Assembly: GCF_032191835.1 (NCBI RefSeq)
Contig: NC_083239.1
Location: 40,052,001 to 40,116,000 of the forward strand
Source: Heteronotia binoei
Lineage: Eukaryota
Direction of reading: 5' to 3'
Length of the DNA: 64,000 nucleotides
Each line of letters opens with the position of its first letter. Positions within the stretch are counted from its first letter, which is position 1. Position numbers and translations under genes: made by a program. Positions 1,442-56,077 of this stretch are shown here, one piece after another. The notes under the pieces were generated by a model. That model worked only from the letters and a program-made list of their open reading frames with translations, did no database searches and had not been told where the DNA came from.

Positions 1442-1999
1442 CGCGCAAGTGGATTTTGGCCTTTGGCACCTCAAATCCAGCTGCGAAGTGCCCTGAAAAT
1501 GGATTGAAAGTGCATTATTCTGCAAGTGTGAAAGTGGCTACAAAGAAATGACTTATCTCGGCTTTGAGAACACTGCTGGCTTTTGGGCACAGCACACTGC
1601 CTTCCCTGAGTCAGGTCTAGCAAGGTCAGGATCGCCTGCTCTGACCAGCAGCAGCTCCCAGGCAGAGAGGTCGTTCCCATCTCCTCCTGCCTGGTATCGA
1701 ACCTGGCACCTTGTGAATGCCAAGCCGAGGCTCCCCCGCCGAGCCCCACAGTCCCTCGCACTGCTGGGAGAAACTGAAACTGCGGCCAATTCCGCGCTAG
1801 GCTTTTAATCCTGGTCCAGCCCTGTCCCCAGACTGATTTTCTACACCAGAAACAGAGAAGCAAAAACTCATAGAGTGGGTCTCTATGATTCCATGATTCA
1901 AGTACAGAATTTCAGTTTGGGGACAAGGCTGGACCAAGATTAAAAGTCGAGTGCGGAAGTGGCCTGTGTCTTCGCATTGCAAACCTGCAAGTTTGGGGG

Positions 2000-2684: not shown

Positions 2685-3092
2685 CAGGGGTGGCCAAACT
2701 TGCTTAACATAAGAACCATATAGAATAAATGTCAGATGNNNNNNNNNNNNNNNNNNNNNNNNNNNNNNNNNNNNNNNNNNNNNNNNNNNNNNNNNNNNNN
2801 NNNNNNNNNNNNNNNNNNNNNNNNNNNNNNNNNNNNNNNNNNNNNNNNNNNNNNNNNNNNNNNNNNNNNNNNNNNNNNNNNNNNNNNNNNNNNNNNNNNN
2901 NNNNNNNNNNNNNNNNNNNNNNNNNNNNNNNNCTTTAACTTTAAATGCATTCTCCAATGCACTTAAATAAGAGATTTAAAGAGAAAAATGTCTTCTCCAA
3001 GCTGGCTGATGGGGCAGTGGTGTCTTCAAGAGCCACACAGTATGTGTGAAAGAGCCACATGCATCTCTCAAGCCACAGTTGGGCCACCCCTA
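2685..3092. mobile_element. hAT-like MITE (CAGGGGTGGCCAAACT family) spanning the assembly gap
   Basis: TIR-like ends match the copies at 26930-27570, 45806-46366 and 58815-59130. Confidence 0.7.
2739..2932. other. Assembly gap (194 N)
   Basis: Run of N. Confidence 1.
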
Positions 3093-30129: not shown

Positions 30130-31523
30130 TATTTATTTATTTATTCCGGGATTTATATCCCGCCCTTCCCACGAGTGGCTCAGGGCGGCTTACAACAGAC
30201 AACAAAACAATAAAATCAGAATAAATTAGTTACATTTAAAATCAAGCATTTAAAAACCTAAAACCTTAAAATTAGTATTAACTATAGAGTTATCACAGAA
30301 ATCTAAAAGCTACATTTATCCAGTCAGGGGTAGGCTAACCAGAAGAGGGTCGTCTTACAGGCCCTGCGGAACTGGGTAAGATCCCGCAGGGCCCTCACCT
30401 CTTCCGGTAGCTGGTTCCACCACATAGGGGCCGTTGTAGAGAAGACCCTGTCTCTCGTTGTCTTGAGACGCACTTCCTTAGGCCCGGGGATGTTGAGAAG
30501 ATTTTGGGTCCCAGACCTCAGTACTCTCTGGGGAACGTGTGGGGAGAGACGGTCTCTCAGGTAGGCAGGTCCCAGGCCATATAGGGCTTTAAAGGTAATA
30601 ACCAGCACCTTGTACCGGACCCGGTATGTTATTGGGAGCCAGTGCAGAGCCCGAAGACCCGGCCGAATGTGCCCCCATCTTGGGAGGCCCAATAACAGCC
30701 GGGCCGCGGCATTCTGCACCAGCTGCAGTTTCCGGGTCCGGCACAGGGGCAGCCCCATGTAGAGGGCATTGCAGTAATCCAACCTCGAGGTGACCGTAGC
30801 GTGGATCACTGTTGCTAGGTCGTCGGGGTCCAGGAAGGGGGCCAACTGCCTTGCCCGTCTAAGATGAAAAAACGCGGACTTGGCAGCGGCCGCTATCTGG
30901 GCCTCCATCTTTAGGGACGGCTCCAGTAGCACCCCCAGGCTTCTGACCCTGTCCGCTGGCCTCAGCAGTACTCCGCCAAAAGTTGGCAGGGGGATTTCCC
31001 CCCCCGGTCCCCGATGGCCCAAACAAAGGACCTCTGTCTTCGCAGGATTCAGTGTCAGTCCACTCAGTCTGAGCCACTCAGCCACAGCCTGTAATGCCTG
31101 ATCTAGGTTCTCTGGGGCGCAGACCGGTTGGCCGTCCATAAGTAGATAGAGCTGGGTGTCATCAGCATACTGGTGGCACCCCAGCCCATACCTTCGGGCA
31201 ATCTGGGCAAGAGGTCGCATATAGATGTTGAATAACATCGGGGAGAGAACCGCTCCCTGGGGCACCCCACAGTTAAGTGAGCGCCTCTGGGATAGCTCCC
31301 CCCCAATAGCGACCCTCTGTCCCCGACCTTCAAGGAAAGAGGAAAGCCACTGCAAGGCTAACCCCTGAATCCCCGCGTCGGCGAGGCGGCAAGTCAGCAA
31401 CTGATGGTCGACCGTATCGAACGCTGCCGATAGGTCCAACAACATCAGTACCGCCGAGCCACCCCGATCCAGATGCCGTCGAAGGTCATCCACCAGGGCA
31501 ACCAACACCGTCTCCGTCCCATA
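30130..31523 (-). mobile_element. L2 LINE, 5' truncated, with an open RT-region ORF
   Basis: 394-aa ORF with LLDLSAAFDTVDH, GVPQGAVLSP and YADDTQLY; (TAAA)n tail at about 30130. Confidence 0.93.
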
Positions 31524-35461: not shown

Positions 35462-36583
35462 TTAAACGTCAGACTCAAAGGCTTTGATGAGAACATTGTG
35501 AGCATCGTCTGCTACTTCATTGAGGGAACTCTGGAGCATGTGGTAGGTGGTTCCAAAGGAGATCCCCCCAGCAGCCAGAGAACCAAATATGGGCACTATG
35601 CTAGCATAATACTTAGCCATCATCAATGCCCTGTCTCCAGCCTTGCTCAGCATCTTCAACACCACATCCTTGGAGATCTCCCTGGCCAAGGGGGACTTAA
35701 TCACCCCTTTGATCTCCTCCACAGGCTTGCCCACCTTCTCTGCCAACTTCTCCAGGGTGTAGTCATCCAGGCCAAAGCTCTTGTGGTACTCCGAGAGGGT
35801 CTTGATCAGGATAGTCACGTCGCAGGCCATGGAGAATCCTGGGATGGGCACTGCTGCCACAAAACATGAGACAGTAGCAAGCTTCCAGATCTGCTTCTTT
35901 AAGGCCTCCTTCTTTTTGTGTAAGATTTCTAGAGAGACGTTGGGCAGGGCAAGGAGGAAGGCGTGTCTCTTGTGGCTCGGAAGCTCTTTCTCCAAGGTTT
36001 CCCGCAGCAGCACAAAGTCATACTTGCTCAGCTCCCAGTTGCAAAGGAGAAAGATACACGGTGATACCACTTTTTCAGCCTCCAGGCACGCTTTGCAGTT
36101 CTCACGGATCTGTCGCAGGATGTCCTCCTCATTGTAGGCATGTGGTCGACGCTTTTTGGTGGCCTCCAGGTCCGCGTCTACTTTGGAACGTACAAAATAG
36201 AAGCGTTTGCCCTGCTTCTCAATCTCTTTGGCCAGATGGGCATGGTTGGCTTTGAAGCGTTCTGAGGCGATGAGAATAAAGAAGTCATAGCGGGAGAAGT
36301 TCACCTGTTCCAGGTAAGTGTCAGACTGGAAGTTGGGTGTACCGATTCCTGGCAAGTCCCAAACCGTCACTTTGGGATGCTTGGGGTGCAGGTAGGGAGT
36401 TGGCTTTACAGTCGTCTTCACCACCCCGGTGGGGGCAGATCCATCGTCTTCATCTCCTAGGCCTCGGATGGCGTTAACAAAAGAGGACTTCCCGGAGCCA
36501 GACTCTCCTATTACTGCGATATCAAGACAAGCGTTTTCCAAGGCCTGCAAGTTTTCCATGATCTTGGAGGCAGCATCTGCCAT
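35462..36583 (-). CDS. IRGC: IRGC-like immunity-related GTPase, paralog A (373 aa from the first in-frame ATG; frame open back to the acceptor at 36690/36689)
   Basis: GESGSGKS, DLPG and SKVD motifs; IRGC-type C-terminus (GGISFG..Y.ML...LNEVADDA); single coding exon; tail-to-tail with SMG9 as in human. Confidence 0.88.
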   Translation of the reverse strand: MADAASKIMENLQALENACLDIAVIGESGSGKSSFVNAIRGLGDEDDGSAPTGVVKTTVKPTPYLHPKHPKVTVWDLPGIGTPNFQSDTYLEQVNFSRYDFFILIASERFKANHAHLAKEIEKQGKRFYFVRSKVDADLEATKKRRPHAYNEEDILRQIRENCKACLEAEKVVSPCIFLLCNWELSKYDFVLLRETLEKELPSHKRHAFLLALPNVSLEILHKKKEALKKQIWKLATVSCFVAAVPIPGFSMACDVTILIKTLSEYHKSFGLDDYTLEKLAEKVGKPVEEIKGVIKSPLAREISKDVVLKMLSKAGDRALMMAKYYASIVPIFGSLAAGGISFGTTYHMLQSSLNEVADDAHNVLIKAFESDV

Positions 36584-36878
36584 TCTCCCTCCTTCAAGAG
36601 CATCTTTAATCTCTTCAATGTTCTCAATGTCACATTCTCCTGTGAGCTCAGCCACTGGGGGCTGAACCGTCCCCGGGTCAAGTCGACGCCTGAGAGGAAA
36701 GGGGGAAAGAAAAATACAATGTTTATCATGAAACCTTTAAAAGAAACAAGTCTTTGTAACTTGTTTGAAACAAGTAATTTTTCTCCTGGCCAGATTGGTA
36801 AGGGATCCTGGAGGTTTTTGCCATCTTCTGGGCATGGAGTAGGGATCACTGTGCATGTATGTGTGGGTGGGAGGTATT

Positions 36879-37060: not shown

Positions 37061-38219
37061 GAGGTATTTGTGAATTCCCTGCATTGTGCAAGGGGTTGGA
37101 CTAGATGCCCCTGGACATCCTTTCCAACTCTTATGATTAAGGAAGCCATGGCCATCATTTTGCAAGACCCAAGCAAGGCTGTTATTTAAGATGTTTTAGA
37201 GGCAGTGGTCATTTTGTAGAAAAATAGGTGGTGGAGCTCATCCAGGAATGGTTATGCAGCTGCACATACTATTCAATTGATAAGGAAGTGGAACTCTCAA
37301 AAGGAGGAGGTGGAACTCTCAGAAAGGTTCAGGAGCTGTGCTGCTGTGAGCTCCCACTGAATCTGAGGCCTGTTTAGAGGTAATCAATTCATAGAGTCGC
37401 CATAAGTTGGAAGTGACCTGTCAGTATTTAACACACATAAGTAATGAATGCACAGAAGAGTCTCGTAATAAATTAGTATCGAAACTCTCCACAGTTGCCT
37501 TTTTGGATCAGTGGCAGAACATCTGCTTGGCATGCAGAAGGTCCCAGGTTCAATCTCCGGTATCTCCACTTAACAGATGGGCAGTAGGGGATGAGAAAGA
37601 CCTGGGGAGCTGCTGCCAGTCTGAGTAGACAATACTGACTTTGATGGGCCAAAGGTCTGATTCAGTATAATGCAGTTTCATATTTCCATATGGATGAAAT
37701 TGCCTTATAAGCTGCCCTTGGTCTATCAAGGTCAGTACTGTACTCAGACTCGCAGCAGCTCTCCAGGGTGTCACGTAAATGACTTTCACGTCACCTTCTG
37801 CCTGGTCCTTTAAACTGAAGATGCCAGAGATTGAACCTGGAACTTTCTGTACGCCAAGCAGATGTTCTGCCACTGAGTCACAGCCCCTCCACAAAATAAT
37901 AACGCACATGACTCACACTTGGATTACCGCCAGCTGTTCACCTCTGTCAACTTTCTTTTCTGTAAAATACTTCTAAGAAGCCCTTGAGTCAGGGAAAGAG
38001 CCGCTTATCTTGGATGAGACTCAGAGCGGCTTACAATCTCCGACCTATATCTTCTCCCCCCACAACAGACACCCTGTGAGGTGGGTTTGGGCTGAGAGGA
38101 CTCTCACAGCAGCTGCCCTTTCAAGGACCTCTGCCAGAGCTATGGCTGACTCAAGGCCATTCCAGCAGCTGCAAGTGGAGGAGTGAGGGAACAAACCCGG
38201 TTCTCCCAGATAAGAGTCC

Positions 38220-38673: not shown

Positions 38674-39890
38674 AGTCCGCACACTTAACCACTACGCCAA
38701 CTGGCTCTCCCTGGAGTGAGGTGCAGGAGAAGGGGAACAAGAAGATACAGAACGTTTTTCCTTTCTGCAAGTGTGGCGTAGTGGTTTGCATCTTCACTTG
38801 CCCTGAAATGTACTGGTTGCTCTTGTGCCAGTTTCTCCCTCTCTCAGCATAACCTACCTCACAGGGCTGTTGTGAGCATGATGGAAGTACGGAGAACTTT
38901 GTGCACCACCTCAAGCTGCTTGGAGGAAGAGGATGAAAAAAATATATACCAAATAAACAAAATTCTGTTTGATAGAAAATAACATTTCTTCACACAAGGT
39001 GTTTCCTAGCACCACAAATTAAGGATAAATGGACCAGAAAAAAATGGCAAGATATCCATAGATATGAGTAAAGTGTTGTCCATCTCTGCAGGGGGTTGGA
39101 AACTTTGGAAAGGGGTGAGGATTGTCTGGGAGACAAAACTAACTCAGACACATAATATTCAACCAGTTTCACAGAATTATTTATCTCATTCTTAATCCAA
39201 ACAGCTCAAAGTGCATTTATTGCAATTGAAAATGAAACAGAACACTGCAAACCACCTGTCCCAACGAAGGGTAACTTATTATGCCTCATTTCCTTGAACA
39301 TTCCAAAATGTCACTGAGGATCTTGGTAACCAGCACATGAATTTAAACTGGTTCATTAGCTGACCCACTGCTTCGAAAACACAAGATTAAACTGGTTGCA
39401 AAAAGAAAAGGAGAGCACTGCAACAAGGCCCATTTGGCAGAGGTGAGAAGGTGCCTTCGCTGGTGCAAAAATCTAAAAAGGACAAAAGCTTTGCATTCAG
39501 TCACTGCAAAAATTGCCAAGGGGGATTTTTCGTTCATGCCAACGCTACTGAGCACACACCACCGGTCTGATGTTCTGGAACAGGGGTGGCCAAACTTGTT
39601 TAATGTAAGAACCACAAAGAATAAATGCCAGATGTTTGAGGGAAGGCAGGCAGCCAGGCAAATAGATGAGAGGAGTGGAGGTTTAAAGAAAGCAACTTTA
39701 AATGCAGATCCCGCGACAGACCCTACACTCCGCAGAATCTCTGCTCTACAAAGCCCCCTTGTGACTTTTGGTGGGGAGGGGAAGAGAAAGTTGGGGAACA
39801 TTTTTGCCAAGCCGCCCGAATAGGGCTGCCCCCGATTTCTTGCAAAACTCTTCCTTTACCTTTTCCGCCCACTTGGTGCCATCTATGCAC

Positions 39891-40690
39891 CTGATCCCCA
39901 AGGAGCAGCACCAGACGTCCGCAACAAGAAAGAGGTGACGTGGAGTCTGGAGGAGTCTCAAGAGAGATCGAAGTTGCTATGGGACGTGCAGGTTTCGTTT
40001 CCTGCTTCTATTCAAACCCGGACTTGTTGCCAGGGGCGGGATGTATTAAAAACGAATGACAAAATTGTCCATAGAAAACAATGGGAGAAGCTGGATTGTC
40101 CGTAGGATATAATGGGAGAGAAGATTGTCAGTATGGGCTCCAGGGGCTACTACAATCACACACAGTAAATAATGCACTTTCAATGCACTTTCCAAATGGG
40201 TTTCGCCTGTTCACCTAGTAAAATCCAGTTGGAAAGTGGATTGAACGTACATTATTAGGGCGTCTGCCTGTGATCGCAGCCAGAGTGTATGTGCGCATGG
40301 GAGTTAAGGACTTTTGCCTGCTCTCCCCCCCCCCCGCCCCCTTAAGGCGGGCGTGGAAAGGCACGTGTTTTATCTACGTGCAAACAAACCCCATTTGTTT
40401 CCAGGGCGGACTTCGAACCGGAATCGGAGAGCGGAGCAAAGACTACTGCAGACGCTCAGAGCAATTGGAAAGAAAGGGAGGGGAAAGGGAAAACCCGGGG
40501 GGGAAATCCGCTGCTGTTCAACTTCGCCCTGCAGGTAGCTAGATAAGGATGTCCGCCGAAGAGAGACCAGGCGCAGGCAGATCCCGGCTAGATCACGTGG
40601 AATATAAGAAAGTGAAACTTGAAATGCTTTTTTTTTTGTGCGATTTCTCATCAAAAGAGAGAAAATGGCCGAAGGACCAGCTCAGATCTC
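39891..40690. promoter_or_regulatory. Bidirectional promoter P1 with the first exons of IRG paralog A (minus) and the unknown gene (plus)
   Basis: ISREs AGAAAGTGAAACT at 40607-40619 and GGTTTCGTTTCC at 39991-40002; RFX-like GTTGCTATGGGAC at 39973-39985; CACGTG; donors CAG|GTGCAT (minus, 39891) and CTC|GTAAGT (plus, 40690). Confidence 0.7.
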
Positions 40691-43388
40691 GTAAGTACCA
40701 AAGCGCGGCAGAAGGAAAGAGTCGATCTAGGGTTATTATTATTATTTAATGGTGAGAATTGTTAATATTCCACCGCCCGACCCAAAGCACTTTGCAGGAT
40801 CCCTGCAAATATTACAGCTGCAATTCCCCACCCCCGTTTGTAACTTTGAAAGGGGATCTTGCACTGGAGATGTGGTTCGCTTGGAATGCTTTCTCCCTGT
40901 ACAGAATCGCGCAGAACTGGCGCAGGCGCAGCATCCTTCAGTGTTGGGTCTACCCCACGCTGTTCTTTCGGCAGGTTTTCACTTATCCGGAAAGATTTTC
41001 ATTGAAAGAATATGCCATTTAGAGTTAATTTTGGAAAAGTTTAACGCAGGTAGGTAGTACTCTGTGTCTGTTTGGAAAGAGCTATGGATAGGATTGCCAG
41101 CTGGGAAAGACCTGGAAATGTGGGGGTTGGGAAATACCTGGAGATTTTGGGGGTGGAGCCTGAGGAGGGCGTGGTTTGGGGAGGTGGAAGGACTTTAATG
41201 GCTTATATATGGTGCCATAGAGTCCCACCTTCCAAACCGACATTTTCTCCAGAAGATATTGGATACTGGATTTATATCCCGCCCTATACTCTGAATCTCA
41301 GAGTCACAGAGGGGGTCACAATCTCCTCTACCTCCCCCCCCCTCCCACAACAGACACCCTGTGAGGTGGGTGAGGCTGAGAGAGCTTTCAGAAGCTGCTC
41401 TTTCAAGGACAACTCTTGAGAGAGCTATGGCTGACCCAAGGCCATTCCAGCAGCTGCAACTGGAGAAGTGGGGAATCAAACTCGGCTCTCCCAGAAAAGA
41501 GTCCGCGCACTTTACCACTACACCAAACTGGCTCTCTCCAAGCACACTGATCTCACCTCTCTCTCACCTGGAGAAAAGTGGTAATCCCAGGAGATCTCCA
41601 GCCACCACCTAGAGATTGGTAGCCCTGACTGTGATCCTTTTTGCCATTCGGTTCATTGGGCTCACGGTTTGCTACTCTTGGCTACTCTTGGCAAACTGGC
41701 CAAGGTACCATACAGAGAAAAGGATTTCCTGACACTTGTTACTCCGAGCATTAAGGGGATGTATGCAGTTCTGGAGCACAATTTGGGAAGGTAACGATGG
41801 AATAGGAGCAAGTAATTGAGCCAACACACCAGGCTGCCTTATACTGAATCACACTGCCGATTCAGCATAGTCAATCTTGTCTTCTCAGAACGGCAGCTGC
41901 TCTTCCGGGTCTCAGGAAAAGGTATTCTGCACCCCCAATTACCTGATCCTTTTATCTTGAGATGCCAGGGATTGAACCTGGGACCTTCTGGCGTGCACAG
42001 CAGATGCTTTACCACTGAGCCATGGCTCCACCCCCCTTATAGTGTTCTTTTGGGTATGTCAGGTGAGCAAGGAAGGTTCTCCTTCTCCAAATACTCAGGT
42101 TCTGTTGTTAGTCCCTCGGCAGTTGCATGCTAGAGAAAAAGATGGCGACCTTTCAACATTTCCTGTCACAACATTTTGTATTTACTCTAAACTTAAGCAT
42201 CCCAGGGCAAGGAGAAGTAGCTTGCAGCTTTAAAAAAAAATCAAAGTACAGAATGATGTCTTTGAATTATTACCTCCCCATTCTTTTGGGGGGGGGGGAG
42301 GAGGTTGCACTAATCTCTGCCAGTTCCCCCCTCAGGGCTTCGGAGAGTCCTCCTAAAAGGGATTGGAATGCAGTACTGATGAGTACTACCACAAAAAAAG
42401 CCCTGTTAGCTTCCAAAATTAATGTCAAATCTCCCTCTCTTCCTTCCTTTCTTCCTCCCTCCCTCCTGTTTTTAGGAACATGGCTGACCTCTTCAGAAAC
42501 GGCATCCAGTGGGCCCTCAGTGGATTCCTCCGATCCTTTCTAACACAAGTTAAGAGAATCCTGATGGTGTCCACCACAATGATTGTGGCTTCTGTTCTCT
42601 TGTCTGCCTTCTGGCTCACTCTGGAGAAGGCGGATTATTCTCTCTCAGCCTCTGGGCATGAGATGGCTGTGAACAACAAGCATAAGTGGGCCCCGCATGG
42701 GATTGTCAGCATCCTAAGGGACTTCCTGCAGTATGCATCCATCCTGTTGTCCTCCTATGAACCGCTGAGCCTTGGGAACCTCCTGAGGCACCGCGATCGG
42801 CTGAGCGGGGTGAACTATATGCTCCAGGCTTGTTTCAACGAAGCCATCGACGGCTTTAATCAGGAGCCTGTCTTGGTGCAACAGAATTCCAAAATGGTCA
42901 TCCAGTGTGACGGACAAACCGTGCAGTTCCTCGCCGGCAGCGGGGACTGCGAGATTTCAGTGTATCTCTTGCACAACGCCATCCATTTCGACGTCCGGGA
43001 GCGGACTGCCGACATGTACCTCGCTCGGCTGTCCAGACGCCAGGAGCCATTGAGTGTTCGCGATCTCCTGAGGGTGAAAAGTGAGTTACAGTCCTGGGGG
43101 GTGCTTTCGGAAGAACTGCGGGGCTGCCTGGAGTTCACGGTGCAGGAATACGCCAAGGAGCCTTTGTGCGTCCAAGACAACGCCAACCTGGTTGTAGACT
43201 GTGGGGGCCAAGTGGTGAGGTTTGCTTCCGGGCGTGAGAACAACCACATCAATGTCTTTGATGTACGGGATGGCACCATTCACTACCGCGTCAAGATCTC
43301 AAGTCTTTGGGCCAGCACCGTGCGGTTCTTCAACGGGAACAGGGACCACGCCCAAACACGGGGGATGAAGCTGTTGCAGTTAGAATGA
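40665..43388 (+). CDS. Uncharacterised 312-aa protein with an N-terminal hydrophobic anchor and two tandem ~95-aa repeats; join 40665-40690, 42476-43388
   Basis: 302-codon ORF after a polypyrimidine-AG acceptor; upstream AAAATGG exon with a GTAAGT donor joins in frame (MAEGPAQIS-NMADLF); internal repeat conserved at protein level; AATAAA at 43666. Confidence 0.85.
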
Positions 43389-48009: not shown

Positions 48010-48500
48010 CACTGTCCATAAGAATATAACATAAGAGAAGCCATATTGGATCAGGCCAATGGCCCATCCAGTCCAACACTCTGTGTCACACAGCGGCCAA
48101 AAAAAAAGGAGGCTCACAAGTGGGGCTAGAAGCCCTTCCACTTTGCCCCCCCCCCCCCCAAGCACCAAGAATACAGAGCATCACTGCCCCAGACAGTTCC
48201 AATAATATGCTGTGGCTAATAACCACTGATGGGCCTCTGCCCCATATTTTTATCCAAACCCCTCTTGAAGCTGGCTATGCTTGTAGCCGCCACCACGTCC
48301 TGTGGCAGTGAATTCCACATGTTAATCACCCTTTAGGGGAAGAAGAACTTCCTTTTATCCGTTCTAACCCGACTGCTCAGCAATTACATCGAATGCCCAC
48401 GAGTTCTTGTATTGTGAGAAACGGAGAAAAGGACTTCTTTCTCTACTTTCTCCATCCCATGCATAATCTTGTAAACCTCTATGATGTCACCCCGCAAGCG
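48010..48500 (-). mobile_element. CR1 3' fragment that truncates the third IRG
   Basis: LRGDIIEVYKIMHGMEKVEKEVLFS...RTRGHSM and a CR1 tail; tail-to-tail with another CR1 end at 47850-48005. Confidence 0.9.
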
Positions 48501-48821
48501 ATTGCAAACAACAAATATGAAGAAATCGTATTGGCTGCCATTTACCCTTTCTAGATATTCCTCAGCTTTGAAATTAGGTGGCCCAATTCCTGGTAGGTCC
48601 CATATTATTACATCTGGAACGGTGGAGTGTGGGTAGCCCACTGGCTCCATTGTAGTTTGCATCGCACCCGTTTCAGCGGCCCCCTCATCATAATCTGACA
48701 GACCTTGCAGGGCACTGACAAGGGATGATTTACCAACACCCCACGTCCCTGTGATGGCAATGTCGAGTGTGGTTTGTTCAAAAGCTTCCTGTCTTTGTTC
48801 CGTTGAGTTTTTACCACCCAT
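48384..48821 (-). pseudogene. Truncated IRG-family GTPase fused in frame to a CR1 ORF2 tail (145 aa)
   Basis: MGGKNS start; LDIAITGTWGVGKSS, TTMEP..YPH, IWDLPGIG and YDFFIF; no G4 motif or C-terminal helical domain; acceptor at 48847/48846. Confidence 0.85.
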
Positions 48822-49214
48822 GATGGCTCTTGAATATTCAGTTGATCTGAAAAATAAACACAAATATTGGGTCTGTTAACTCTGACTGCTACGTAATATT
48901 TACATGTCGTTTTCCTCATACAATCTAGATTTAGCTGTGGGGAAGGGATCAGTTTACTTGAGGTGTTTACCATGGGTAGAACAATTTCTACCCATTTCTT
49001 TGTTATATTATGGAAAGCCCTATATGGTATGGGACCAGATTCAGTAGGAGCTTACAGGAGCACAGCTCCTGAAACTTTCTGATGGTTCCCCTTCTCCCTC
49101 CCCACCTACCTTGTCCATTGAATAGTAGGTGCAGCTGCATAACAATCCCTGGATTAGGAGAGCAGGCAAGCAGCCAGCCATCAGGAGCTTTGCCACACCC
49201 CCAGCAGCCCTCAC

Positions 49215-51300
49215 TAAGAACGTAAGAGAAGCCATGTTGGATCAGGCCAATGGCCCATCCAGTCCAACACTGTGTCACACAGTGGCCAATATATGTGTGT
49301 GTGTATATACACACACACATATATATACTGTGGCTAACAGCCACTGATGGACCTCTGCTCCATATTTTTATTCAATCCCCTTTTAAAGCTGGCTATGCTT
49401 GTAGCCGCCACCACCTCCTGTGGCAGTGAATTCCACATGTTAATCACCCTTTGGGTGAAGAAGTACTTTTTAAAATCCATTTTAACCTGACTGTTCAGCA
49501 ATTTCATTGAATGCCCACGAGTTCTTGTATTGTGAGAAAGGGAGAAAAGTACTTCTTTCTCTACTTTCTCCATCCCATGCATAATCTCGTAAACCTCTAT
49601 GTCACCCCGCAGTCGACGTTTCTCCAAGCTATAGCACCCCAAGCGTTTTAACCTTTCTTCATAGGGAAAGTGTTCCAAACCTTTAATCATTCTAATTACC
49701 CTTTTCTGCACTTTTTCCAATGCTATAATATCCTTTTTGAGGTGCGGTGACCAGAATTGTACACAGTATTCCAAATGAGACCTCGATTTATACAGGGGCA
49801 CTATGATACTGACTGATTTGTTTTCAATTCCCTTCCTAATAATTCCCGGCCTTTTTTATTGCATTGCACACTGCCTTGACATTTTCGGTGAGTTATCTAC
49901 CACGACCCCAAGATCTCTCTCTTGGTCAGTCTCTGCCAGTTCACAACCCATCAACTTGTATTTGTAGCTGGCATTCTTGGACCCAATGCGCATTACTTTG
50001 CACTTGGCCACATTGAACCTCATCTGCCACGCTGTCACCCACTCGTCCAGCCTCAACAGATCCCTTTGGAGTGCCTCACAATCCTCTCTGGTTCTCACCA
50101 CCCTGAATAATTTAGTGTCATCTGCAAATTTGGCCACTTCACTGCTTACTCCCAACTCCAAATCATTAATGAACAAGCTGAAGAGCATGGGACCCAGTAC
50201 TGAGCCCTGCGGCACCCCACTGCTTACCGTCCTCCACTGTGAAGACTGCCCATTTATACTCACTCTCTGCTTCCTATTAATTAGCCAGTTTTTGATCCAC
50301 AAGAGGACCTGTTCTTTTGCTCCATGACTCTCAAGCTTACTAAGGAGCCTTTGATGAAGAACTTTATCAAAAGCTTTCTGGAAGTCAAGGTAAACAACAT
50401 TTATTGGGTCCCCTTTGTCCACATGTTTGTTCACCCCCTCAAAGAACTGTAACAGATTAGTGAGGCAAGCTCTTCCCTTACAGAACCCATGCTGAGTCTT
50501 CCCCAATAACTTCTCTTCATCAATGTGCCTACTCATTCTGTCCTTGATAATGGTTTCTACCAACTTTCCCGGTATTGAAGTCAGACTGACTAGCCTGTAA
50601 TTTCCCGGATCTCCTCTGGAACCCTTTTTAAAGATGGGGGTGACATTTGCTACCTTCCAGTCCTCAGGAACAGAGGCAGATTTCAATTAAAGATTACATA
50701 TTCTTATCAGGAGATCCACAAGTTCAACTTTGAGTTCTTTAGAACTCTTGAATGTATGCCATCCGGAACTGGTGACATTAGTTTTTAATTCATCAATCAG
50801 TTGTAGGACCTCCTCTCTTGTCACCTCAATCTGACTCAGGTCTTTCAGCACCCCTTCCAAAATTAGTGGTTCTGGAGCGGGCAAACACTTCTCATCTTCC
50901 ACAGTGAAGACGGAGGCAAAAAATGCATTCAGCTTCTCAGCCATTTCCCTATCCTTCAGTAATCCTTTTACCCCTTGGTCATCCAAGGGCCCCACTGCCT
51001 CCCTGGCTGGTTTCCTGCTTCTAATATATTTGAAGAAATTTTTATTGTTGATCTTTATGTTTTTTGCAATATGCTCCTCATAGTCCGTTTTTGCCTGCCT
51101 GATCATAGTCTTGCATTTGATTTGCCACAGCCTGTGTTCCCTTTTATTAATCTCACTTGGGCTAGCTTTCCAGGGCTTAAAGGAGTCCTTCTTACCTTTT
51201 ACAGCTTCCATTACTTTGTTAACCATGCAAGCCTTTTCTTATACCTGTTTGTGCCTTTCCTAACTTGTGGTATATATTTCATCTGAGCTTCTAGGAATGT
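49215..51300 (-). mobile_element. CR1 LINE (RT region to 3' end, disrupted)
   Basis: DWKVANVTPIFKKG..DPGNYR.VSLTS, YLDFQKAFDKV, GVPQGSVLGP, FADDTKL; split across three ORFs. Confidence 0.95.
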
Positions 51301-51429: not shown

Positions 51430-51924
51430 TTTCTGCAACAGAATCTGAGCCGCCCTTTCGGCTATTTCCTCTCATTTGATAAGAAATCACTCCCCCCCCC
51501 CCCATCATTTTAAGTTTCACTTTCTTGTATTTCGCTTGATCGAGTGGGAAACCGGCCGCAGCAGTCTTGGCCGCGGACTTCCTTATCCAGCTAATGGCAA
51601 GGCGAGGTTTGCAGGCAGCGGGCTTTCCCCGGGTTCTTTCCAAGGGCACTTTTGCAGGAGTCCATCCTCGGTTCGAAGTCCGCCTTGGGAACAAAAAGGG
51701 TTTTCCCCACGCAAGATAAAAACACGTGCCTTCCAGCAGGGGTCAGGCGAGCGCCGCCATCTCTTGCGCACGCATTTACACGCGCCCCAAGACAGGAAAG
51801 TGCCTGTTTTCGGAGAAGCAGGAAGCTGCACCGGCTTGGGCGTCCTAGCAACTTCATTCTCTCTCGAGAAACGCCTTCCGAACCCACCCCTTTCCTCGTA
51901 GCCGAGTTGCTCCTTGCTGCTCAG
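51430..51924 (+). promoter_or_regulatory. Promoter P2 and non-coding first exon of IRG paralog B (inverted copy of P1)
   Basis: ISRE AGTTTCACTTTCT at 51513-51525; CACGTG; CCTAGCAAC; donor CAG|GTGCCT at 51924/51925; reverse-complement similarity to 39890-40700. Confidence 0.72.
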
Positions 51925-54841
51925 GTGCCTGGATTGTTACACACGGGTGGAAAAGGTAAAGGCGGAGGAGGGTTGGGGCAAAGGACGAGGCCGGGATGGG
52001 GGTTGCAAAGCTTTTGCAAGAAATCGACAGGCAGCCCCTTTCGAACGGCTTTGCGAAAACCTCCGCCTTCCCCAAAAAATCACAACTAGGCTTTGCAGAG
52101 CAGTGATTCCGCGGAGTAGAGGGATTGGTGGCGAGATCTGCCCGGGAGTTTCGGGACGGTCGTAGGCGGGTCTCCAGATTGCATGTTGCAAGCGGCCGGC
52201 GGATGAACAAGTCACCGAGGGGCTTCACGGGTCGTTGGAAAGGAAAGGTCCCTTGTTCAAGCACCAGTCGTTTCCGACTCTGGGGTGACGTCGCTTTCAC
52301 AGCGTTTTCACGGCAGACTTTTGATGGGGTGGTTTGCCATTGCCTCCCCCAGTCATCTACATTTTCTCCCCAGCAAGCTGGGTACTCATTTTATCCACCT
52401 CGGAAGGATGGAAGACTAAGTCAGCCTCGAGCCGGCTACCTGAAAACCCAGCTTCCACCGGGGATCGAACTCAGGTCGTTAGGAGGGGACGAAATGTGGG
52501 TTTCGTGCCTGTTTGCTAGCCCTGTTTAACCAGTTTGGTGTAATGGTTAAGTGTGTGAACTCTTATCTGGGAGAACCCGGGGTTGATTCCCCACTCCTCC
52601 CCTTGCAGCTGCTGGAATGGCCTTGGGTCAGCCATAGCTATCTCAGGAGTTGTCCTTGAAAAGGCAGCTGCTGTGAGAGCCCCTCTCAGCCCCACCCACC
52701 TCACAGGGTGTCTGTTGTGGGGGGGAGAAGATAAGAGTCCGCACACTTAACCACTACACCAAGCTGGCTCTCAGTTCCCCTGAAGAAAAGGGATTGTTTG
52801 GAGGGTGGACACTACAGCATTGTGTCCCACAGAGCTCCCTGTCTTCCCCAGGTTCCATTCTGAGATCTCCAAGAGTTTCCCAACCCTGGAGCTGGCAGCC
52901 CTAACCCCCCCCCCCCCATTCCCTGCCAGGGGCCAGAAGACACCTGGCAACCCTAGGAGCAGGAGGGGTTGCATTTCTGGATGAGAGGGAGGGATACATC
53001 CATTTTGTTGAGGCAAAGGGTTACGTGGGTTACGATTAGAAGTGATCTGAGGAGAAGATCCACATCTCTCCTATACAAGGGGCCCTTCAGTGGCTTTGAA
53101 AGGACCTAGGAAAGAGGCTGATTTGAGGCCTAGAACAAGATGGCTGCCGAGGCACCTGATGAACCAGAGTTTAGTGGAAGCCGCTCTAAAAAGTGATTTG
53201 AGATTTCTTTACGTGATGTTGAGGGGACACTGTTCCCTCAGTGGTTTTGAGGCTGAGGAACAACTGTGGGGCACTATCAGCTGTTCACTGCTCTCTGTAT
53301 TTCTCTGTGGGATTATGAAATTACATATTTATGCTTCTTAACCAAGGCTAATTGTTTAGATTATAATTTTTGCCCTTCCCCAGAGAGCAGAGCACTTGAT
53401 TTTGTTGGGGTAGTTGACTCTGTCGTCAACATGCTTCACCCCCTTGAATTTACACATAGATGTGGAGGGTCTGGTTCTCCCCTCAGGATAAAGCGGGGAA
53501 AGCCATACCTGAATAATACCGCATTCAGTTTGGGAGTCCATAGTGACTTAATCCAGATTAGTTATCCCCTTAATGCTATATGTACCAATGGTGGTTCAAG
53601 AATGGGCTTTCCTTCGGTATGGATTAAGGCGGTGAATGTGAATATTTGTATCCCCAAAGGAATAAAAAAGAGACAAATGTTGAGAGAGGTTGTATGATGT
53701 AGAAGCAGGAGCTTTGAACTATGACTGGAGAAACCTGAGTTCTAATCCTTGCTTGGCCATGAAAGTCACTGGGGAACTGGGATCGGCCATATGTGTTTAG
53801 GCCTAAATCTACCTCACAGGATTGTTTTAAGGAACAGGGGAGGGAGAACCAAATGCGTTCTTTGAACTGTTTGGATGTGGAATGGGATAAATAATACCTA
53901 AAACTGGTTGAATTTCATGTGTCTGAGTGAGTTTTGTCTCCCAGACAACCTTCAATGGAGAGCCAGTTTGGTGTAGTGGTTAAGTGTGCGGACTCTTATC
54001 TGGGAGAACCGGGTTTGATTCCCCACTCCTCCACTTGCACCTGCTGGAATGGCCTTGGGTCAGCCATAGCTCTGGCAGAGGTTGTCCTTGAAAGGGCAGC
54101 TGCTGTGAGAGCCCTCTCCAGCCCCACCCACCTCACAGGGTGTCTGTTGTGGAGGAGGAAGGTAAAGGAGATTGTGAGCCGCTCTGAGACTCTTCGGAGT
54201 GGAGGGCGGGATATACATCCAATATATCTTCTTCTTTTATCTTCTACCCCTTTCCAAAATTTCCAACCCCCCTGCAAATATGAAGACAACACTCCACTCT
54301 TGTCCATGGGTTCTTTGCCAGGATTTATCTGGCCCATATATCCTCAGTGTGTGGTGCTTGGAAACACCCTGTGCTTGGAAACATTATTTTATATCAAACA
54401 CAGATTTTTTATTTATTTGGTGTATTTTCTTCATGCTGTTTCTCTAAGCAACTTGAGGCAGTGTACATAGTTCTCCCATTTTACCCTCACAGTAAGCTCT
54501 GTAAGAAGAGCCCTGTAAGCTTTTGGAGGATTCGCTACATTAGGGACGTGTGGCCTAATATGCAAAGGAGTTCCTGCTACAAAAAAAGCCCTGAGCTTTC
54601 TTATCCTGGGTCTGTGTTGATCTGAACGTTGATGTAGTTTTAGCTCTAGTATAAAAGATGGCTGATCTCTGCAAAGGCGAAGTTTCCTTGTATCTGAGAA
54701 AAAGCTTCAAATGTTGCTGAGTGGAGGAATACGATGCAGGCTAGTGTTCCCCAAACTGAGAAAGGAAGGTCTGTTTTTAAATGTTTCACAGTAAGAGTTG
54801 TATACTCTCTCTCCTTTCCTCTCAGGCCTCGACTTGATCCA

Positions 54842-56077
54842 ATGGCGGTTCAGCCCCCAGTGGCTTTGCCCAGCAGGGCTGAGCTCATAGAAGAATATGA
54901 CATCATTACCGAAGAGGACATTGAAGAGATTAAAGATGCTCTCGAAGGAGGGAGAATGGCAGATGCTGCCTCCAAGATCATGGAAAACTTGCAGGCCTTG
55001 GAAAACGCTTGTCTTGATATCGCAGTAACAGGAGAGTCTGGCTCCGGGAAGTCCTCTTTTGTTAACGCCATCCGAGGCCTAGGAGATGAAGATAATGGAT
55101 CTGCCGCCACCGGGGTGGTGGAGACGACTGTAAAGCCAACTCCTTACCCACACCCCAAGCATCCCAACGTGACGGTTTGGGACTTGCCAGGAATCGGTAC
55201 GCCCGACTTCCAGTCTGACACTTACCTGGAACAGGTGAACTTCTCCCGCTATGACTTCTTTATTCTCATCGCCTCAGAACGCTTCAAAACCAACCATGCC
55301 CGTCTGGCCCAAGAGATCCAGAAGCAGGGCAAACGCTTCTATTTTGTACGTTCCAAAGTAGACGCAGACTTGGAGGCCACCAAGAAGCGTCGGCCACACG
55401 CCTACAATGAGGAGGACATATTGCGGCAGATCCGTGAGAACTGCAAAGCGTGCCTGGAGGCTGAAAATGTGGTATCGCCCCGTATTTTTCTCCTTTCCAA
55501 CTGGGAGCTGAGCAAGTACGACTTTGTGCGGCTGGAGGAGACCTTGGAGCAAGAGCTTCCGAGCCACAAGAGACACGCCTTCCTCCTTGCCCTGCCCAAC
55601 ATCTCTTTAGGAATCTTACACAAAAAGAGAGAGGCCTTACAGAAGCAGATCTGGAAGCTTGCTACCGTCTCGTGTGGTGTGGCAGCTGTGCCCATCCCGG
55701 GTCTCGCTGTGGTGTGTGACGTGACTATCCTGGTCAAGGCCCTTTCAGAGTACCGCAGGAGTTTTGGCCTGGATGGTGACTCCCTGGAGAAGTTGGCAGA
55801 GAAGGTGGGCAAGCCTGTGGAGGAGATCAAAGAGGTGATTAAGTCCCCCTTGGCCAGGGAGATCTCCAAGGATGTGGTGTTGAAGATGCTGACCAAGGCT
55901 GGAGGCGGAGCATTGATGATGGCTGAGTATCTTGCTAGTGCAGTGCCCATATTTGGTTCTTTGGCCGCTGGGGGGATCTCCTTTGGAACAACCTACTACA
56001 TGCTCTGGAGTTCCCTCAACGAAGTAGCAGACGATGCTCACAATGTTCTCATCAAGGCCTTTGAGTCTGACGTTTGA
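54842..56077 (+). CDS. IRGC: IRGC-like immunity-related GTPase, paralog B (411 aa)
   Basis: Acceptor at 54825/54826, ATG at 54842; G1 GESGSGKS, switch I TGVVETT, G3 DLPG, G4 SKVD, G5 SNW; about 89% identical to paralog A by hand alignment (42 differences in 373 aa). Confidence 0.92.
   Translation: MAVQPPVALPSRAELIEEYDIITEEDIEEIKDALEGGRMADAASKIMENLQALENACLDIAVTGESGSGKSSFVNAIRGLGDEDNGSAATGVVETTVKPTPYPHPKHPNVTVWDLPGIGTPDFQSDTYLEQVNFSRYDFFILIASERFKTNHARLAQEIQKQGKRFYFVRSKVDADLEATKKRRPHAYNEEDILRQIRENCKACLEAENVVSPRIFLLSNWELSKYDFVRLEETLEQELPSHKRHAFLLALPNISLGILHKKREALQKQIWKLATVSCGVAAVPIPGLAVVCDVTILVKALSEYRRSFGLDGDSLEKLAEKVGKPVEEIKEVIKSPLAREISKDVVLKMLTKAGGGALMMAEYLASAVPIFGSLAAGGISFGTTYYMLWSSLNEVADDAHNVLIKAFESDV

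What the first reader, a model, noticed from the sequence alone, without database searches (positions are those of the whole stretch)
39891..43388. Candidate new interferon-induced module: a bidirectional ISRE promoter pairing an IRG GTPase with an unknown membrane protein
Seen: two divergent first exons lie about 650 bp apart, one with a minus-strand donor at 39891 towards IRG paralog A and one with a plus-strand coding mini-exon at 40665-40690. Each has an adjacent ISRE (GGTTTCGTTTCC at 39991; AGAAAGTGAAACT at 40607, 45 nt before the ATG). Known: these match the IFIT-type (AGTTTCACTTTCC) and Mx-type (AGTTTCGTTTCT) ISREs, and IRGs act on pathogen-containing membranes with partner proteins. 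Inference: the two genes are co-induced by interferon and may work together.
Basis: partly seen in the sequence, partly recalled or inferred. Interest (0 to 1): 0.85.

Follow-up and report, generated by a model that had tools for sequence, protein, structure and literature searches.

The report
Conserved lizard IRG / unknown-protein divergent pair
A real, previously uncharacterised reptile gene for a membrane-anchored protein sits head-to-head with a conserved IRG GTPase gene in every lizard lineage examined, and the two share a short control region with conserved interferon-type DNA motifs, but neither interferon induction nor any joint function has been shown.

Summary
Both ISRE motifs are at the stated coordinates. 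The two-exon model of the unknown gene (40665-40690 joined to 42476-43388) is confirmed by an RNA contig that joins 40690 to 42476, and by a 26-nt mini-exon kept in three other geckos and a cordylid.

The head-to-head IRG arrangement holds in five further squamates. So does the layout of minus ISRE, E-box plus plus-ISRE, and exon 1.

Corrections:
- The IRG A exon ends at 39860 (AAAAG|GTAAAG), not 39891, and carries an ATG at 39882.
- The observed transcript starts at or before 40499, so the plus ISRE lies inside its 5' UTR.
- The partner IRG belongs to the slow-evolving clade that sources name "interferon-inducible GTPase 5-like", not to a fast-evolving immune paralog.
- IRG A has lost the ancestral start exon. 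IRG B, behind an inverted relic copy of the promoter, keeps it.

The protein has an N-terminal transmembrane helix and two copies of a confidently modelled alpha/beta domain. It has no Pfam family and no structural relative, and homologs were found only in non-avian reptiles.

Interferon induction and partnership remain untested. In two RNA libraries that hold most of the unknown gene, IRG A is barely held.

The parts
35462..36689 (-). IRG paralog A, large coding exon (acceptor AG at 36691-36690; stop at 35462-35464)
   Evidence: PF05049 IIGP, E 3.5e-117. Residues 8-416 of NCBI protein P0093 map here at 100% identity. The acceptor was read.
39860..39882 (-). IRG A first coding exon, 3' part: ATG at 39882-39880, MAPSGRK plus AG, donor GT at 39859-39858. 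The transcription start lies upstream at an unknown position.
   Evidence: Translation. N-terminus of P0093. The donor AAAAG|GTAAAGG is conserved in Gekko kuhli and in the window B copy. No RNA coverage.
39991..40002 (-). IRG-side ISRE-like element (GGAAACGAAACC on the minus strand)
   Evidence: Kept at the same relative place and orientation in Gekko kuhli, Hemicordylus and Zootoca, weaker in Rhineura, degenerate in Paroedura and in the window B copy.
40040..40330 (.). Lineage-specific insertion, probably a repeat element, that splits the shared control region
   Evidence: Absent from Gekko kuhli, Paroedura and the window B copy in alignment A3. It matches a repeated inverted element in L001. 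Contig depth is high in the bin 40000-40199.
40340..40430 (.). Conserved block with a GC box (TTTCCAGGGCGGACTTCGAACC)
   Evidence: It is 83% identical to the B copy and conserved in Gekko kuhli and Paroedura. A role as core promoter is inferred.
40499..40690 (+). Unknown gene, exon 1 as seen in RNA (minimum extent). It holds an upstream ATG at 40549, an E-box CACGTG at 40594-40599, the ISRE at 40607-40619, and the start codon at 40665 with a 26-nt coding part.
   Evidence: X1 contig record 6 covers 40499-40690 and is joined to 42476-42599. The E-box plus ISRE composite is conserved. The 26-nt mini-exon and its GT are conserved in Gekko kuhli and Paroedura and in Hemicordylus.
42476..43388 (+). 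Unknown gene, exon 2 (302-codon ORF from 42480; stop at 43386-43388)
   Evidence: Omega is 0.28-0.39 against orthologs.
51430..51980 (-). Inverted, diverged second copy of the control region upstream of IRG B. The ISRE GAAAGTGAAACT is kept at 51513-51524; the mini-exon ATG has become ATA and its donor is lost; the IRG-side ISRE is lost. IRG B non-coding exon 1 ends at 51955 (plus strand).
   Evidence: There is no second copy of the unknown gene's large exon.
53140..53192 (+). IRG B ancestral start exon (MAAE..., 17 codons plus 2 nt)
   Evidence: The homologous exons are present in Zootoca, Hemicordylus, Paroedura, Gekko kuhli and Rhineura. It is absent from IRG A.
54826..56077 (+). IRG paralog B, large coding exon
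   Evidence: PF05049, E 2.8e-114. The acceptor was read. It is 92% identical to Gekko japonicus 'interferon-inducible GTPase 5-like'.

Best explanation
This is an ancient divergent gene pair of squamates.

One member is a slow-evolving IRG GTPase of the type that sources name IIGP5/IRGC-like. The other is a reptile-restricted gene with two coding exons. Its protein has an N-terminal transmembrane helix (about residues 27-48 of the 302-residue ORF) followed by two tandem copies of a roughly 95-residue alpha/beta domain with no known family or fold relative.

The two genes share a control region of 0.5-0.8 kb. It carries an IRF/ISGF3-type element next to the IRG first exon, and an E-box plus canonical ISRE composite about 50 nt before the other gene's start codon.

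Most likely both genes respond to IRF/interferon signalling through these elements. The E-box factor and a GC-box promoter would give basal transcription that starts upstream of the plus ISRE.

Shown here: the gene model, the splice, the conserved synteny, the motif conservation, purifying selection and a confident domain model. Inferred: interferon or IRF responsiveness, use of the elements in both directions, and any functional link between the two proteins.
For: Gene model and selection:
- A spliced RNA contig joins 40690 to 42476.
- Orthologs with the same 10-residue N-terminal extension and the same 26-nt mini-exon exist.
- Omega is 0.28-0.39.

Synteny:
- An IRG lies on the opposite strand directly upstream in Gekko kuhli, Paroedura, Hemicordylus, Zootoca and Rhineura.
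- In Paroedura the two annotated start codons are 197 bp apart.

Motifs:
- The canonical ISRE is enriched, 3 against 0.27 expected.
- TCACGTGG...GAAAGTGAAAC is conserved in three geckos and Hemicordylus and recognisable in Zootoca and Rhineura.
- The minus-side element is conserved in place and orientation.
- The ISRE core (15 of 15 bases) survives in the decayed promoter copy upstream of IRG B, in a background about 69% identical.

IRG side:
- P0093, the NCBI protein matching IRG A, starts in an exon inside the shared region.

Protein:
- The internal repeat scores E 3e-15.
- The domain model has pLDDT 94.5.
Against: - No interferon or poly(I:C) data were available.
- The one transcript seen begins at or before 40499, so the plus ISRE is at least 108 nt inside the 5' UTR. 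An upstream ATG at 40549 precedes the start codon.
- No RNA was seen over the IRG A first exon.
- Word shares in the same two libraries are 0.80/0.75 for the unknown gene and 0.10/0.18 for IRG A. That argues against tight co-expression at steady state, though contigs measure expression poorly.
- The IRG is the conserved type whose mammalian namesake is not interferon-induced (PMC9232189).
- The run of 15 matches in the relic copy is only mildly unlikely once all positions are counted (my estimate is about 0.2).
- Turtle, alligator and snake family members that were checked have no IRG within 10 kb.
Confidence: 0.55

Rival explanations
1. The adjacency is regulatory or historical baggage. The unknown gene lies at the edge of the IRG cluster and stays next to the conserved IRG only because overlapping control elements are hard to separate. 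The two proteins have unrelated functions, and the ISREs may serve only one of the two genes.
For: - Own-genome paralogs of the unknown gene all lie on another contig that has no IRG.
- Turtle, alligator and snake members are not next to IRGs.
- RNA word shares of the two genes are unequal in the same libraries.
- After the duplication in this gecko, the intact IRG (B) kept the promoter relic but not the partner gene.
Against: - The head-to-head order, the spacing and both motif blocks are kept in the gekkotan, cordylid, lacertid and amphisbaenian genomes examined.
- This rival is fully compatible with co-regulation. It disputes only a joint function.
Confidence: 0.3
2. The pair is not an interferon module. 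It has a tissue-specific programme, for example germline expression like mammalian IRGC. The GAAA-repeat elements are bound by constitutive IRF-family or PRDM1-type factors, and the E-box drives expression.
For: - The IRG is named IIGP5/IRGC-like and is the gecko IRG most similar to a bat IRGC entry: 50-55% identity, against 37-43% (up to 48% over one stretch) for six other own-genome IRGs.
- It evolves slowly (omega 0.15; short branches).
- Mammalian IRGC is testis-enriched and not interferon-induced (PMC9232189).
- Both genes are nearly silent in two deep raw-read libraries.
- A conserved E-box lies next to the ISRE.
Against: - The plus element is a perfect match to the canonical ISRE and is kept in the squamates examined.
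- The tree did not place the bat IRGC with this clade, so orthology with IRGC is not shown.
- The clade has 57-66% identical members in frogs, caecilians, lungfish and coelacanth. PMC9232189 reports IRGC1 as not found in Xenopus or zebrafish.
Confidence: 0.12
3. The motifs are chance matches without function.
For: The minus-side motif alone is not rarer than chance in the window.
Against: - The canonical ISRE count is 3 against 0.27 expected.
- Both elements recur at homologous positions in up to five other species.
Confidence: 0.03

Closest known systems
Bidirectional interferon-responsive promoters (BST2/BISPR, PMC4311693; also TAP1/PSMB9, from my own knowledge)
   Same: Two divergent transcription units share a control region of less than 1 kb that holds ISRE/IRF elements.
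   Different: Induction is not demonstrated here. One element lies inside the 5' UTR of the observed transcript. The partner is an uncharacterised protein-coding gene, and the pairing is conserved in the squamates examined.
IRG (p47) GTPases, in particular IRGC / 'interferon-inducible GTPase 5'
   Same: - Full-length PF05049 match with a GKS-type P-loop (GESGSGKSS).
- Gene structure of short 5' exons plus one long coding exon.
- Slow evolution like IRGC.
   Different: - Orthology with mammalian IRGC is supported only by names and best hit, not by the tree.
- It sits at the edge of a cluster with at least 45 IRG matches.
- It has ISRE-type motifs. Mammalian IRGC is not interferon-induced (PMC9232189).
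CIITA promoter IV type E-box plus IRF-element modules (from my own knowledge, not tested)
   Same: A CACGTG E-box lies close to a GAAAGTGAAA IRF element, which suggests cooperation between a USF-type factor and an IRF.
   Different: No GAS site was seen beside the E-box. Binding was not tested.
NMI / IFI35 (interferon-induced proteins with two tandem domains of about 90 residues)
   Same: Two tandem domains of about 95 residues in a candidate interferon-regulated protein.
   Different: No Pfam match to their domains, no structural match, and an N-terminal transmembrane helix here.

Membership tests
ISRE-driven interferon-stimulated gene | Canonical ISRE (GAAANNGAAACT) present | tested here: met
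   GAAAGTGAAACT at 40608-40619, with 3 matches against 0.27 expected in the window. It is conserved in other squamates.
ISRE-driven interferon-stimulated gene | Element lies in the proximal promoter, upstream of the transcription start | tested here: inconclusive
   The only transcript seen reaches 40499, which places the ISRE at least 108 nt downstream of its 5' end. Contigs cannot show starts, and a second start site downstream of the ISRE is possible.
ISRE-driven interferon-stimulated gene | Transcript induced by interferon or viral mimics | not testable with these tools
   No treated and untreated RNA runs were offered.
Bidirectional promoter | Head-to-head genes whose starts lie less than about 1 kb apart | tested here: met
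   The IRG A ATG at 39882 (minus strand) and the unknown gene's RNA 5' end at or before 40499 are about 620 bp apart or less. In Paroedura the two start codons are 197 bp apart. The IRG start site itself was not seen in RNA.
IRG / p47 GTPase (PF05049) | Full-length IIGP domain with P-loop | tested here: met
   E 3.5e-117 for A and 2.8e-114 for B. GESGSGKSS is present in both.
IRGC (IIGP5) orthologs | Groups with mammalian IRGC to the exclusion of other IRGs | tested here: inconclusive
   It is the gecko IRG most similar to a bat IRGC entry and is named so by sources. The tree leaves the bat sequence on a long, unresolved branch outside this clade.
Pfam DUF5507 (only Pfam hit of the unknown protein) | Score above the gathering cut-off | tested here: not met
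   12.2 bits against a cut-off of 27, E 0.15. None of 35 family members matched it.
Any solved protein fold | Structural match covering a domain | tested here: not met
   For the domain model (pLDDT 94.5): Foldseek against PDB gave best E 0.02, VIA-align wide gave best Z 4.6, and the ESM Atlas gave TM of 0.36 or less. AFDB clusters returned only uncharacterised proteins.

The most novel reading that the evidence does not exclude
The unknown protein founds a reptile-restricted, interferon-induced family of membrane-anchored proteins with a new alpha/beta repeat fold. Turtles have expanded it to about 20 repeats. It acts together with the conserved IRG GTPase at an intracellular membrane, and the two have been co-regulated from one shared ISRE-bearing control region since the squamate ancestor.
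Probability: 0.12. Interest if true: 0.8.

Novelty: new variant of a known kind. Interest (0 to 1): 0.55.

Why it matters
Cell-autonomous immunity in reptiles is almost unstudied, and IRG partners are known only from mice.

A conserved pairing of an IRG with a protein of unknown fold, with interferon-type motifs kept in the squamates examined, gives a concrete and testable candidate for a lineage-specific innate-immunity gene.

It also names a new domain family that has no annotation: all homologs are 'uncharacterized protein LOC...'. Finally, it corrects the local gene models, namely the IRG A start exon and the relic promoter of IRG B.

Tried and rejected
- Complex prediction of IRG B with the two-repeat module gave no verdict: score 0.00, and the partner itself folded poorly in that tool. 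It is no evidence either way.
- Read laying was dominated by SINE-like repeats in the introns. The joint table was filled by repeat artefacts, and the IRG A junction could not be assessed.
- The ESM Atlas feature search gave no usable hit.
- PDB sequence searches found nothing significant.
- The profile search through the word index added no new taxa.
- The LOC identifiers of the orthologs occur in no paper of the library. Searches for reptile IRG or ISG literature found nothing on this family.
- Own-genome paralogs on contig C5 were scanned for ISREs. Only a weak IRF-like site lies 4 kb upstream of one, which is inconclusive.
- Logan contigs of two other species proved to be unspliced or genomic and gave no 5' UTR information.
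- Membrane orientation is unresolved. The positive-inside rule predicts the N-terminus in the cytosol and the repeats outside or luminal. Against that, seven orthologs checked have no N-x-S/T sites after the helix, cysteine positions are not kept pairwise between repeats, and the long turtle members show no signal peptide or transmembrane helix.
- The search of earlier findings returned nothing.
Full report
**What is in the sequence**

The window is lizard DNA, very probably Heteronotia binoei. An NCBI protein labelled with that species (P0093) is 100% identical to IRG A over residues 8-416.

The second is a perfect canonical ISRE. GAAANNGAAACT occurs three times in 64 kb against 0.27 expected, and two of the three lie in two paralogous copies of the same promoter. 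The first motif is not rarer than chance on its own.

**The unknown gene is real**

- The ORF 42480-43388 (302 codons) has orthologs in geckos (70-82% identity), other squamates (53-60%) and turtles (about 47%). All are called 'uncharacterized protein'.
- The leopard gecko, Hemicordylus and Paroedura proteins carry a 10-residue N-terminal extension. That is exactly the length the mini-exon 40665-40690 would add.
- The 26-nt coding part and its GT donor align base for base in Gekko kuhli and Paroedura and are present in Hemicordylus.
- In Zootoca and Rhineura the same exon is recognisable, but its ATG is ACG. This fits their annotated start in the large exon.
- In another gecko the large-exon ATG is ACG instead, so either ATG can serve.
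- An RNA contig of run X1 joins 40499-40690 directly to 42476-42599, and a contig of X2 starts matching exactly at 42476.
- Omega against three orthologs is 0.28-0.39.

**Corrections on the unknown gene's promoter**

The X1 contig reaches 40499. At least this transcript therefore contains the E-box (40594-40599), the ISRE and an upstream out-of-frame ATG at 40549 in its 5' UTR. The ISRE is not upstream of that start.

A conserved GC-box block at 40340-40430 is a plausible core promoter for it. An additional start site downstream of the ISRE cannot be excluded, because contigs do not show starts.

**Corrections on the IRG side**

The exon runs on to 39860 (AAAAG|GTAAAG), a donor kept in Gekko kuhli and in the window's second copy.
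- That exon holds an ATG at 39882. Its seven codons, MAPSGRK, are the N-terminus of P0093, joined in phase to the large exon at 36689.
- No read or contig covered 39800-39999 in four runs, so this exon rests on comparison and on the NCBI model.
- IRG A is also unusual. The ancestral start exon (MAAK..., 17 codons plus 2 nt) is present in Zootoca, Hemicordylus, Paroedura, Gekko kuhli, Rhineura and in window IRG B at 53140-53192. It is absent from IRG A.
- IRG A has the longer branch (0.12 against 0.026; dN to Paroedura 0.094 against 0.068).

**A second, inverted copy of the control region**

Positions 51430-51980 are a roughly 69% identical inverted copy of 39850-40690, lying upstream of IRG B.

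- In this copy the mini-exon ATG is ATA and the donor is gone.
- No second large exon of the unknown gene exists in the window.
- The IRG-side ISRE is lost.
- AAGAAAGTGAAACTT is kept 15 of 15.

This hints that the 'plus' ISRE also serves the IRG. The run length is only mildly improbable once all positions are counted (my estimate is about 0.2).

**Conservation across species**

- An IRG lies on the opposite strand directly upstream of the ortholog in Gekko kuhli, Paroedura, Hemicordylus, Zootoca and Rhineura.
- In Paroedura the two annotated start codons are 197 bp apart.
- The composite TCACGTGG, 3-8 nt, GAAAGTGAAAC about 50 nt before the mini-exon is kept in three geckos and Hemicordylus. 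It is recognisable, partly degenerate, in Zootoca and Rhineura.
- The minus-side element recurs 340-420 bp away in the same orientation.
- In the window a 290-bp lineage-specific insertion (40040-40330) widens the spacing.
- A painted-turtle ortholog has a perfect ISRE 2 kb upstream but no IRG within 10 kb. Alligator and garter-snake family members also lack an IRG neighbour.

**Which IRG this is**

The window is the proximal edge of a cluster with at least 45 IRG matches on one contig. IRG A and B, however, belong to a slow-evolving clade:

- 92% identity to Gekko japonicus;
- about 80% to lacertids, skinks and iguanians;
- 73-75% to turtles;
- 60-66% to amphibians, lungfish and coelacanth.

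The clade is named 'interferon-inducible GTPase 5(-like)' or 'cinema' by sources. A and B are the gecko IRGs most similar to a bat IRGC entry, but the tree leaves that long branch unresolved.

Mammalian IRGC is not interferon-induced and is testis-enriched (PMC9232189).

**The protein**

- The full model has mean pLDDT 86. It shows a long N-terminal helix that includes a hydrophobic stretch at about residues 27-48, a linker, and two repeats.
- The repeats are related at E 3e-15.
- Modelled alone, the two-repeat module reaches pLDDT 94.5 and pTM 0.82. Each repeat is three helices, a four-stranded meander and a helix.
- No Pfam family fits. The DUF5507 hit is noise.
- No solved structure matches: Foldseek best E 0.02, VIA-align best Z 4.6. 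The ESM Atlas gives TM of 0.36 or less.
- AFDB clusters return only uncharacterised reptile proteins and a few weak uncharacterised entries.
- An exhaustive search found 52 relatives. All those looked up are from squamates, turtles and alligators, including turtle proteins with up to 20 matched stretches.
- The own genome has further paralogs on another contig, away from any IRG.
- Orientation in the membrane is unresolved. This matters, because luminal repeats could not touch a cytosolic GTPase.

**Expression**

Two metatranscriptomic libraries of the same species label hold 80% and 75% of the unknown gene's sampled words, but only 10% and 18% of IRG A's. Two deep raw-read libraries show almost no reads on either gene.

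This fits low basal expression. It does not support tight co-expression. No interferon-treated material was available.

**Verdict**

- The gene and the conserved divergent arrangement are real, and the motif conservation makes IRF/interferon control the best single reading (about 0.55).
- Co-induction and partnership are untested, and several details weaken the simple picture: the ISRE inside the 5' UTR, the IRGC-like nature of the IRG, and the unequal RNA signal.
- Bidirectional interferon-responsive promoters are a known kind (PMC4311693).
- What is new is the conserved pairing and the unannotated protein family with no fold relative.

Noticed in passing
window 1770-1781: A third canonical ISRE (GAAACTGAAACT) lies far from any recognised gene in the window. 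Nothing obvious is nearby.
   Followed up: partly
window 48486-48839 (-): A fragment of a different IRG subfamily, about 45-51% identical to IRG A/B over roughly 100-120 residues. It is probably a pseudogene piece between the unknown gene and the relic promoter.
   Followed up: no
window 30324-31508 (-) and 49856-51226 (-): Long ORFs with reverse-transcriptase-like sequence (LINE remnants). SINE-like repeats, for example at 41263-41536 and 38013-38219, dominate RNA read depth.
   Followed up: no
G000 contig C17, 40.087-40.776 Mb plus 41.88 and 43.08 Mb: At least 45 matches to the IRG family on one contig. This is a very large IRG expansion in this gecko, and the window is its proximal edge.
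   Followed up: partly
P0015 (Chrysemys, 1934 aa), P0016 (Pelodiscus, 1281 aa), P0017 (Platysternon, 934 aa): Turtles carry giant proteins made of up to 20 matched stretches of the same domain, about four cysteines per repeat, with no transmembrane helix detected. The Chrysemys gene (LOC135974678) appears to lie next to the turtle ortholog (LOC135974679): the LOC numbers are consecutive, and a second weak match to the unknown protein lies about 4 kb downstream in L005.
   Followed up: partly
window 40549: An upstream ATG in the long 5' UTR opens an out-of-frame reading frame that overlaps the main start codon. It is also present in Gekko kuhli. It could damp translation of transcripts that start upstream of the ISRE.
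   Followed up: no
L026 124-126: In another gecko (82% identical protein, Logan contig) the large-exon ATG is ACG, so translation there should depend on the mini-exon ATG. This is the mirror image of Zootoca and Rhineura, where the mini-exon ATG is lost.
   Followed up: partly
window 2739-2932: A run of N (assembly gap or masked), left as it is.
   Followed up: no
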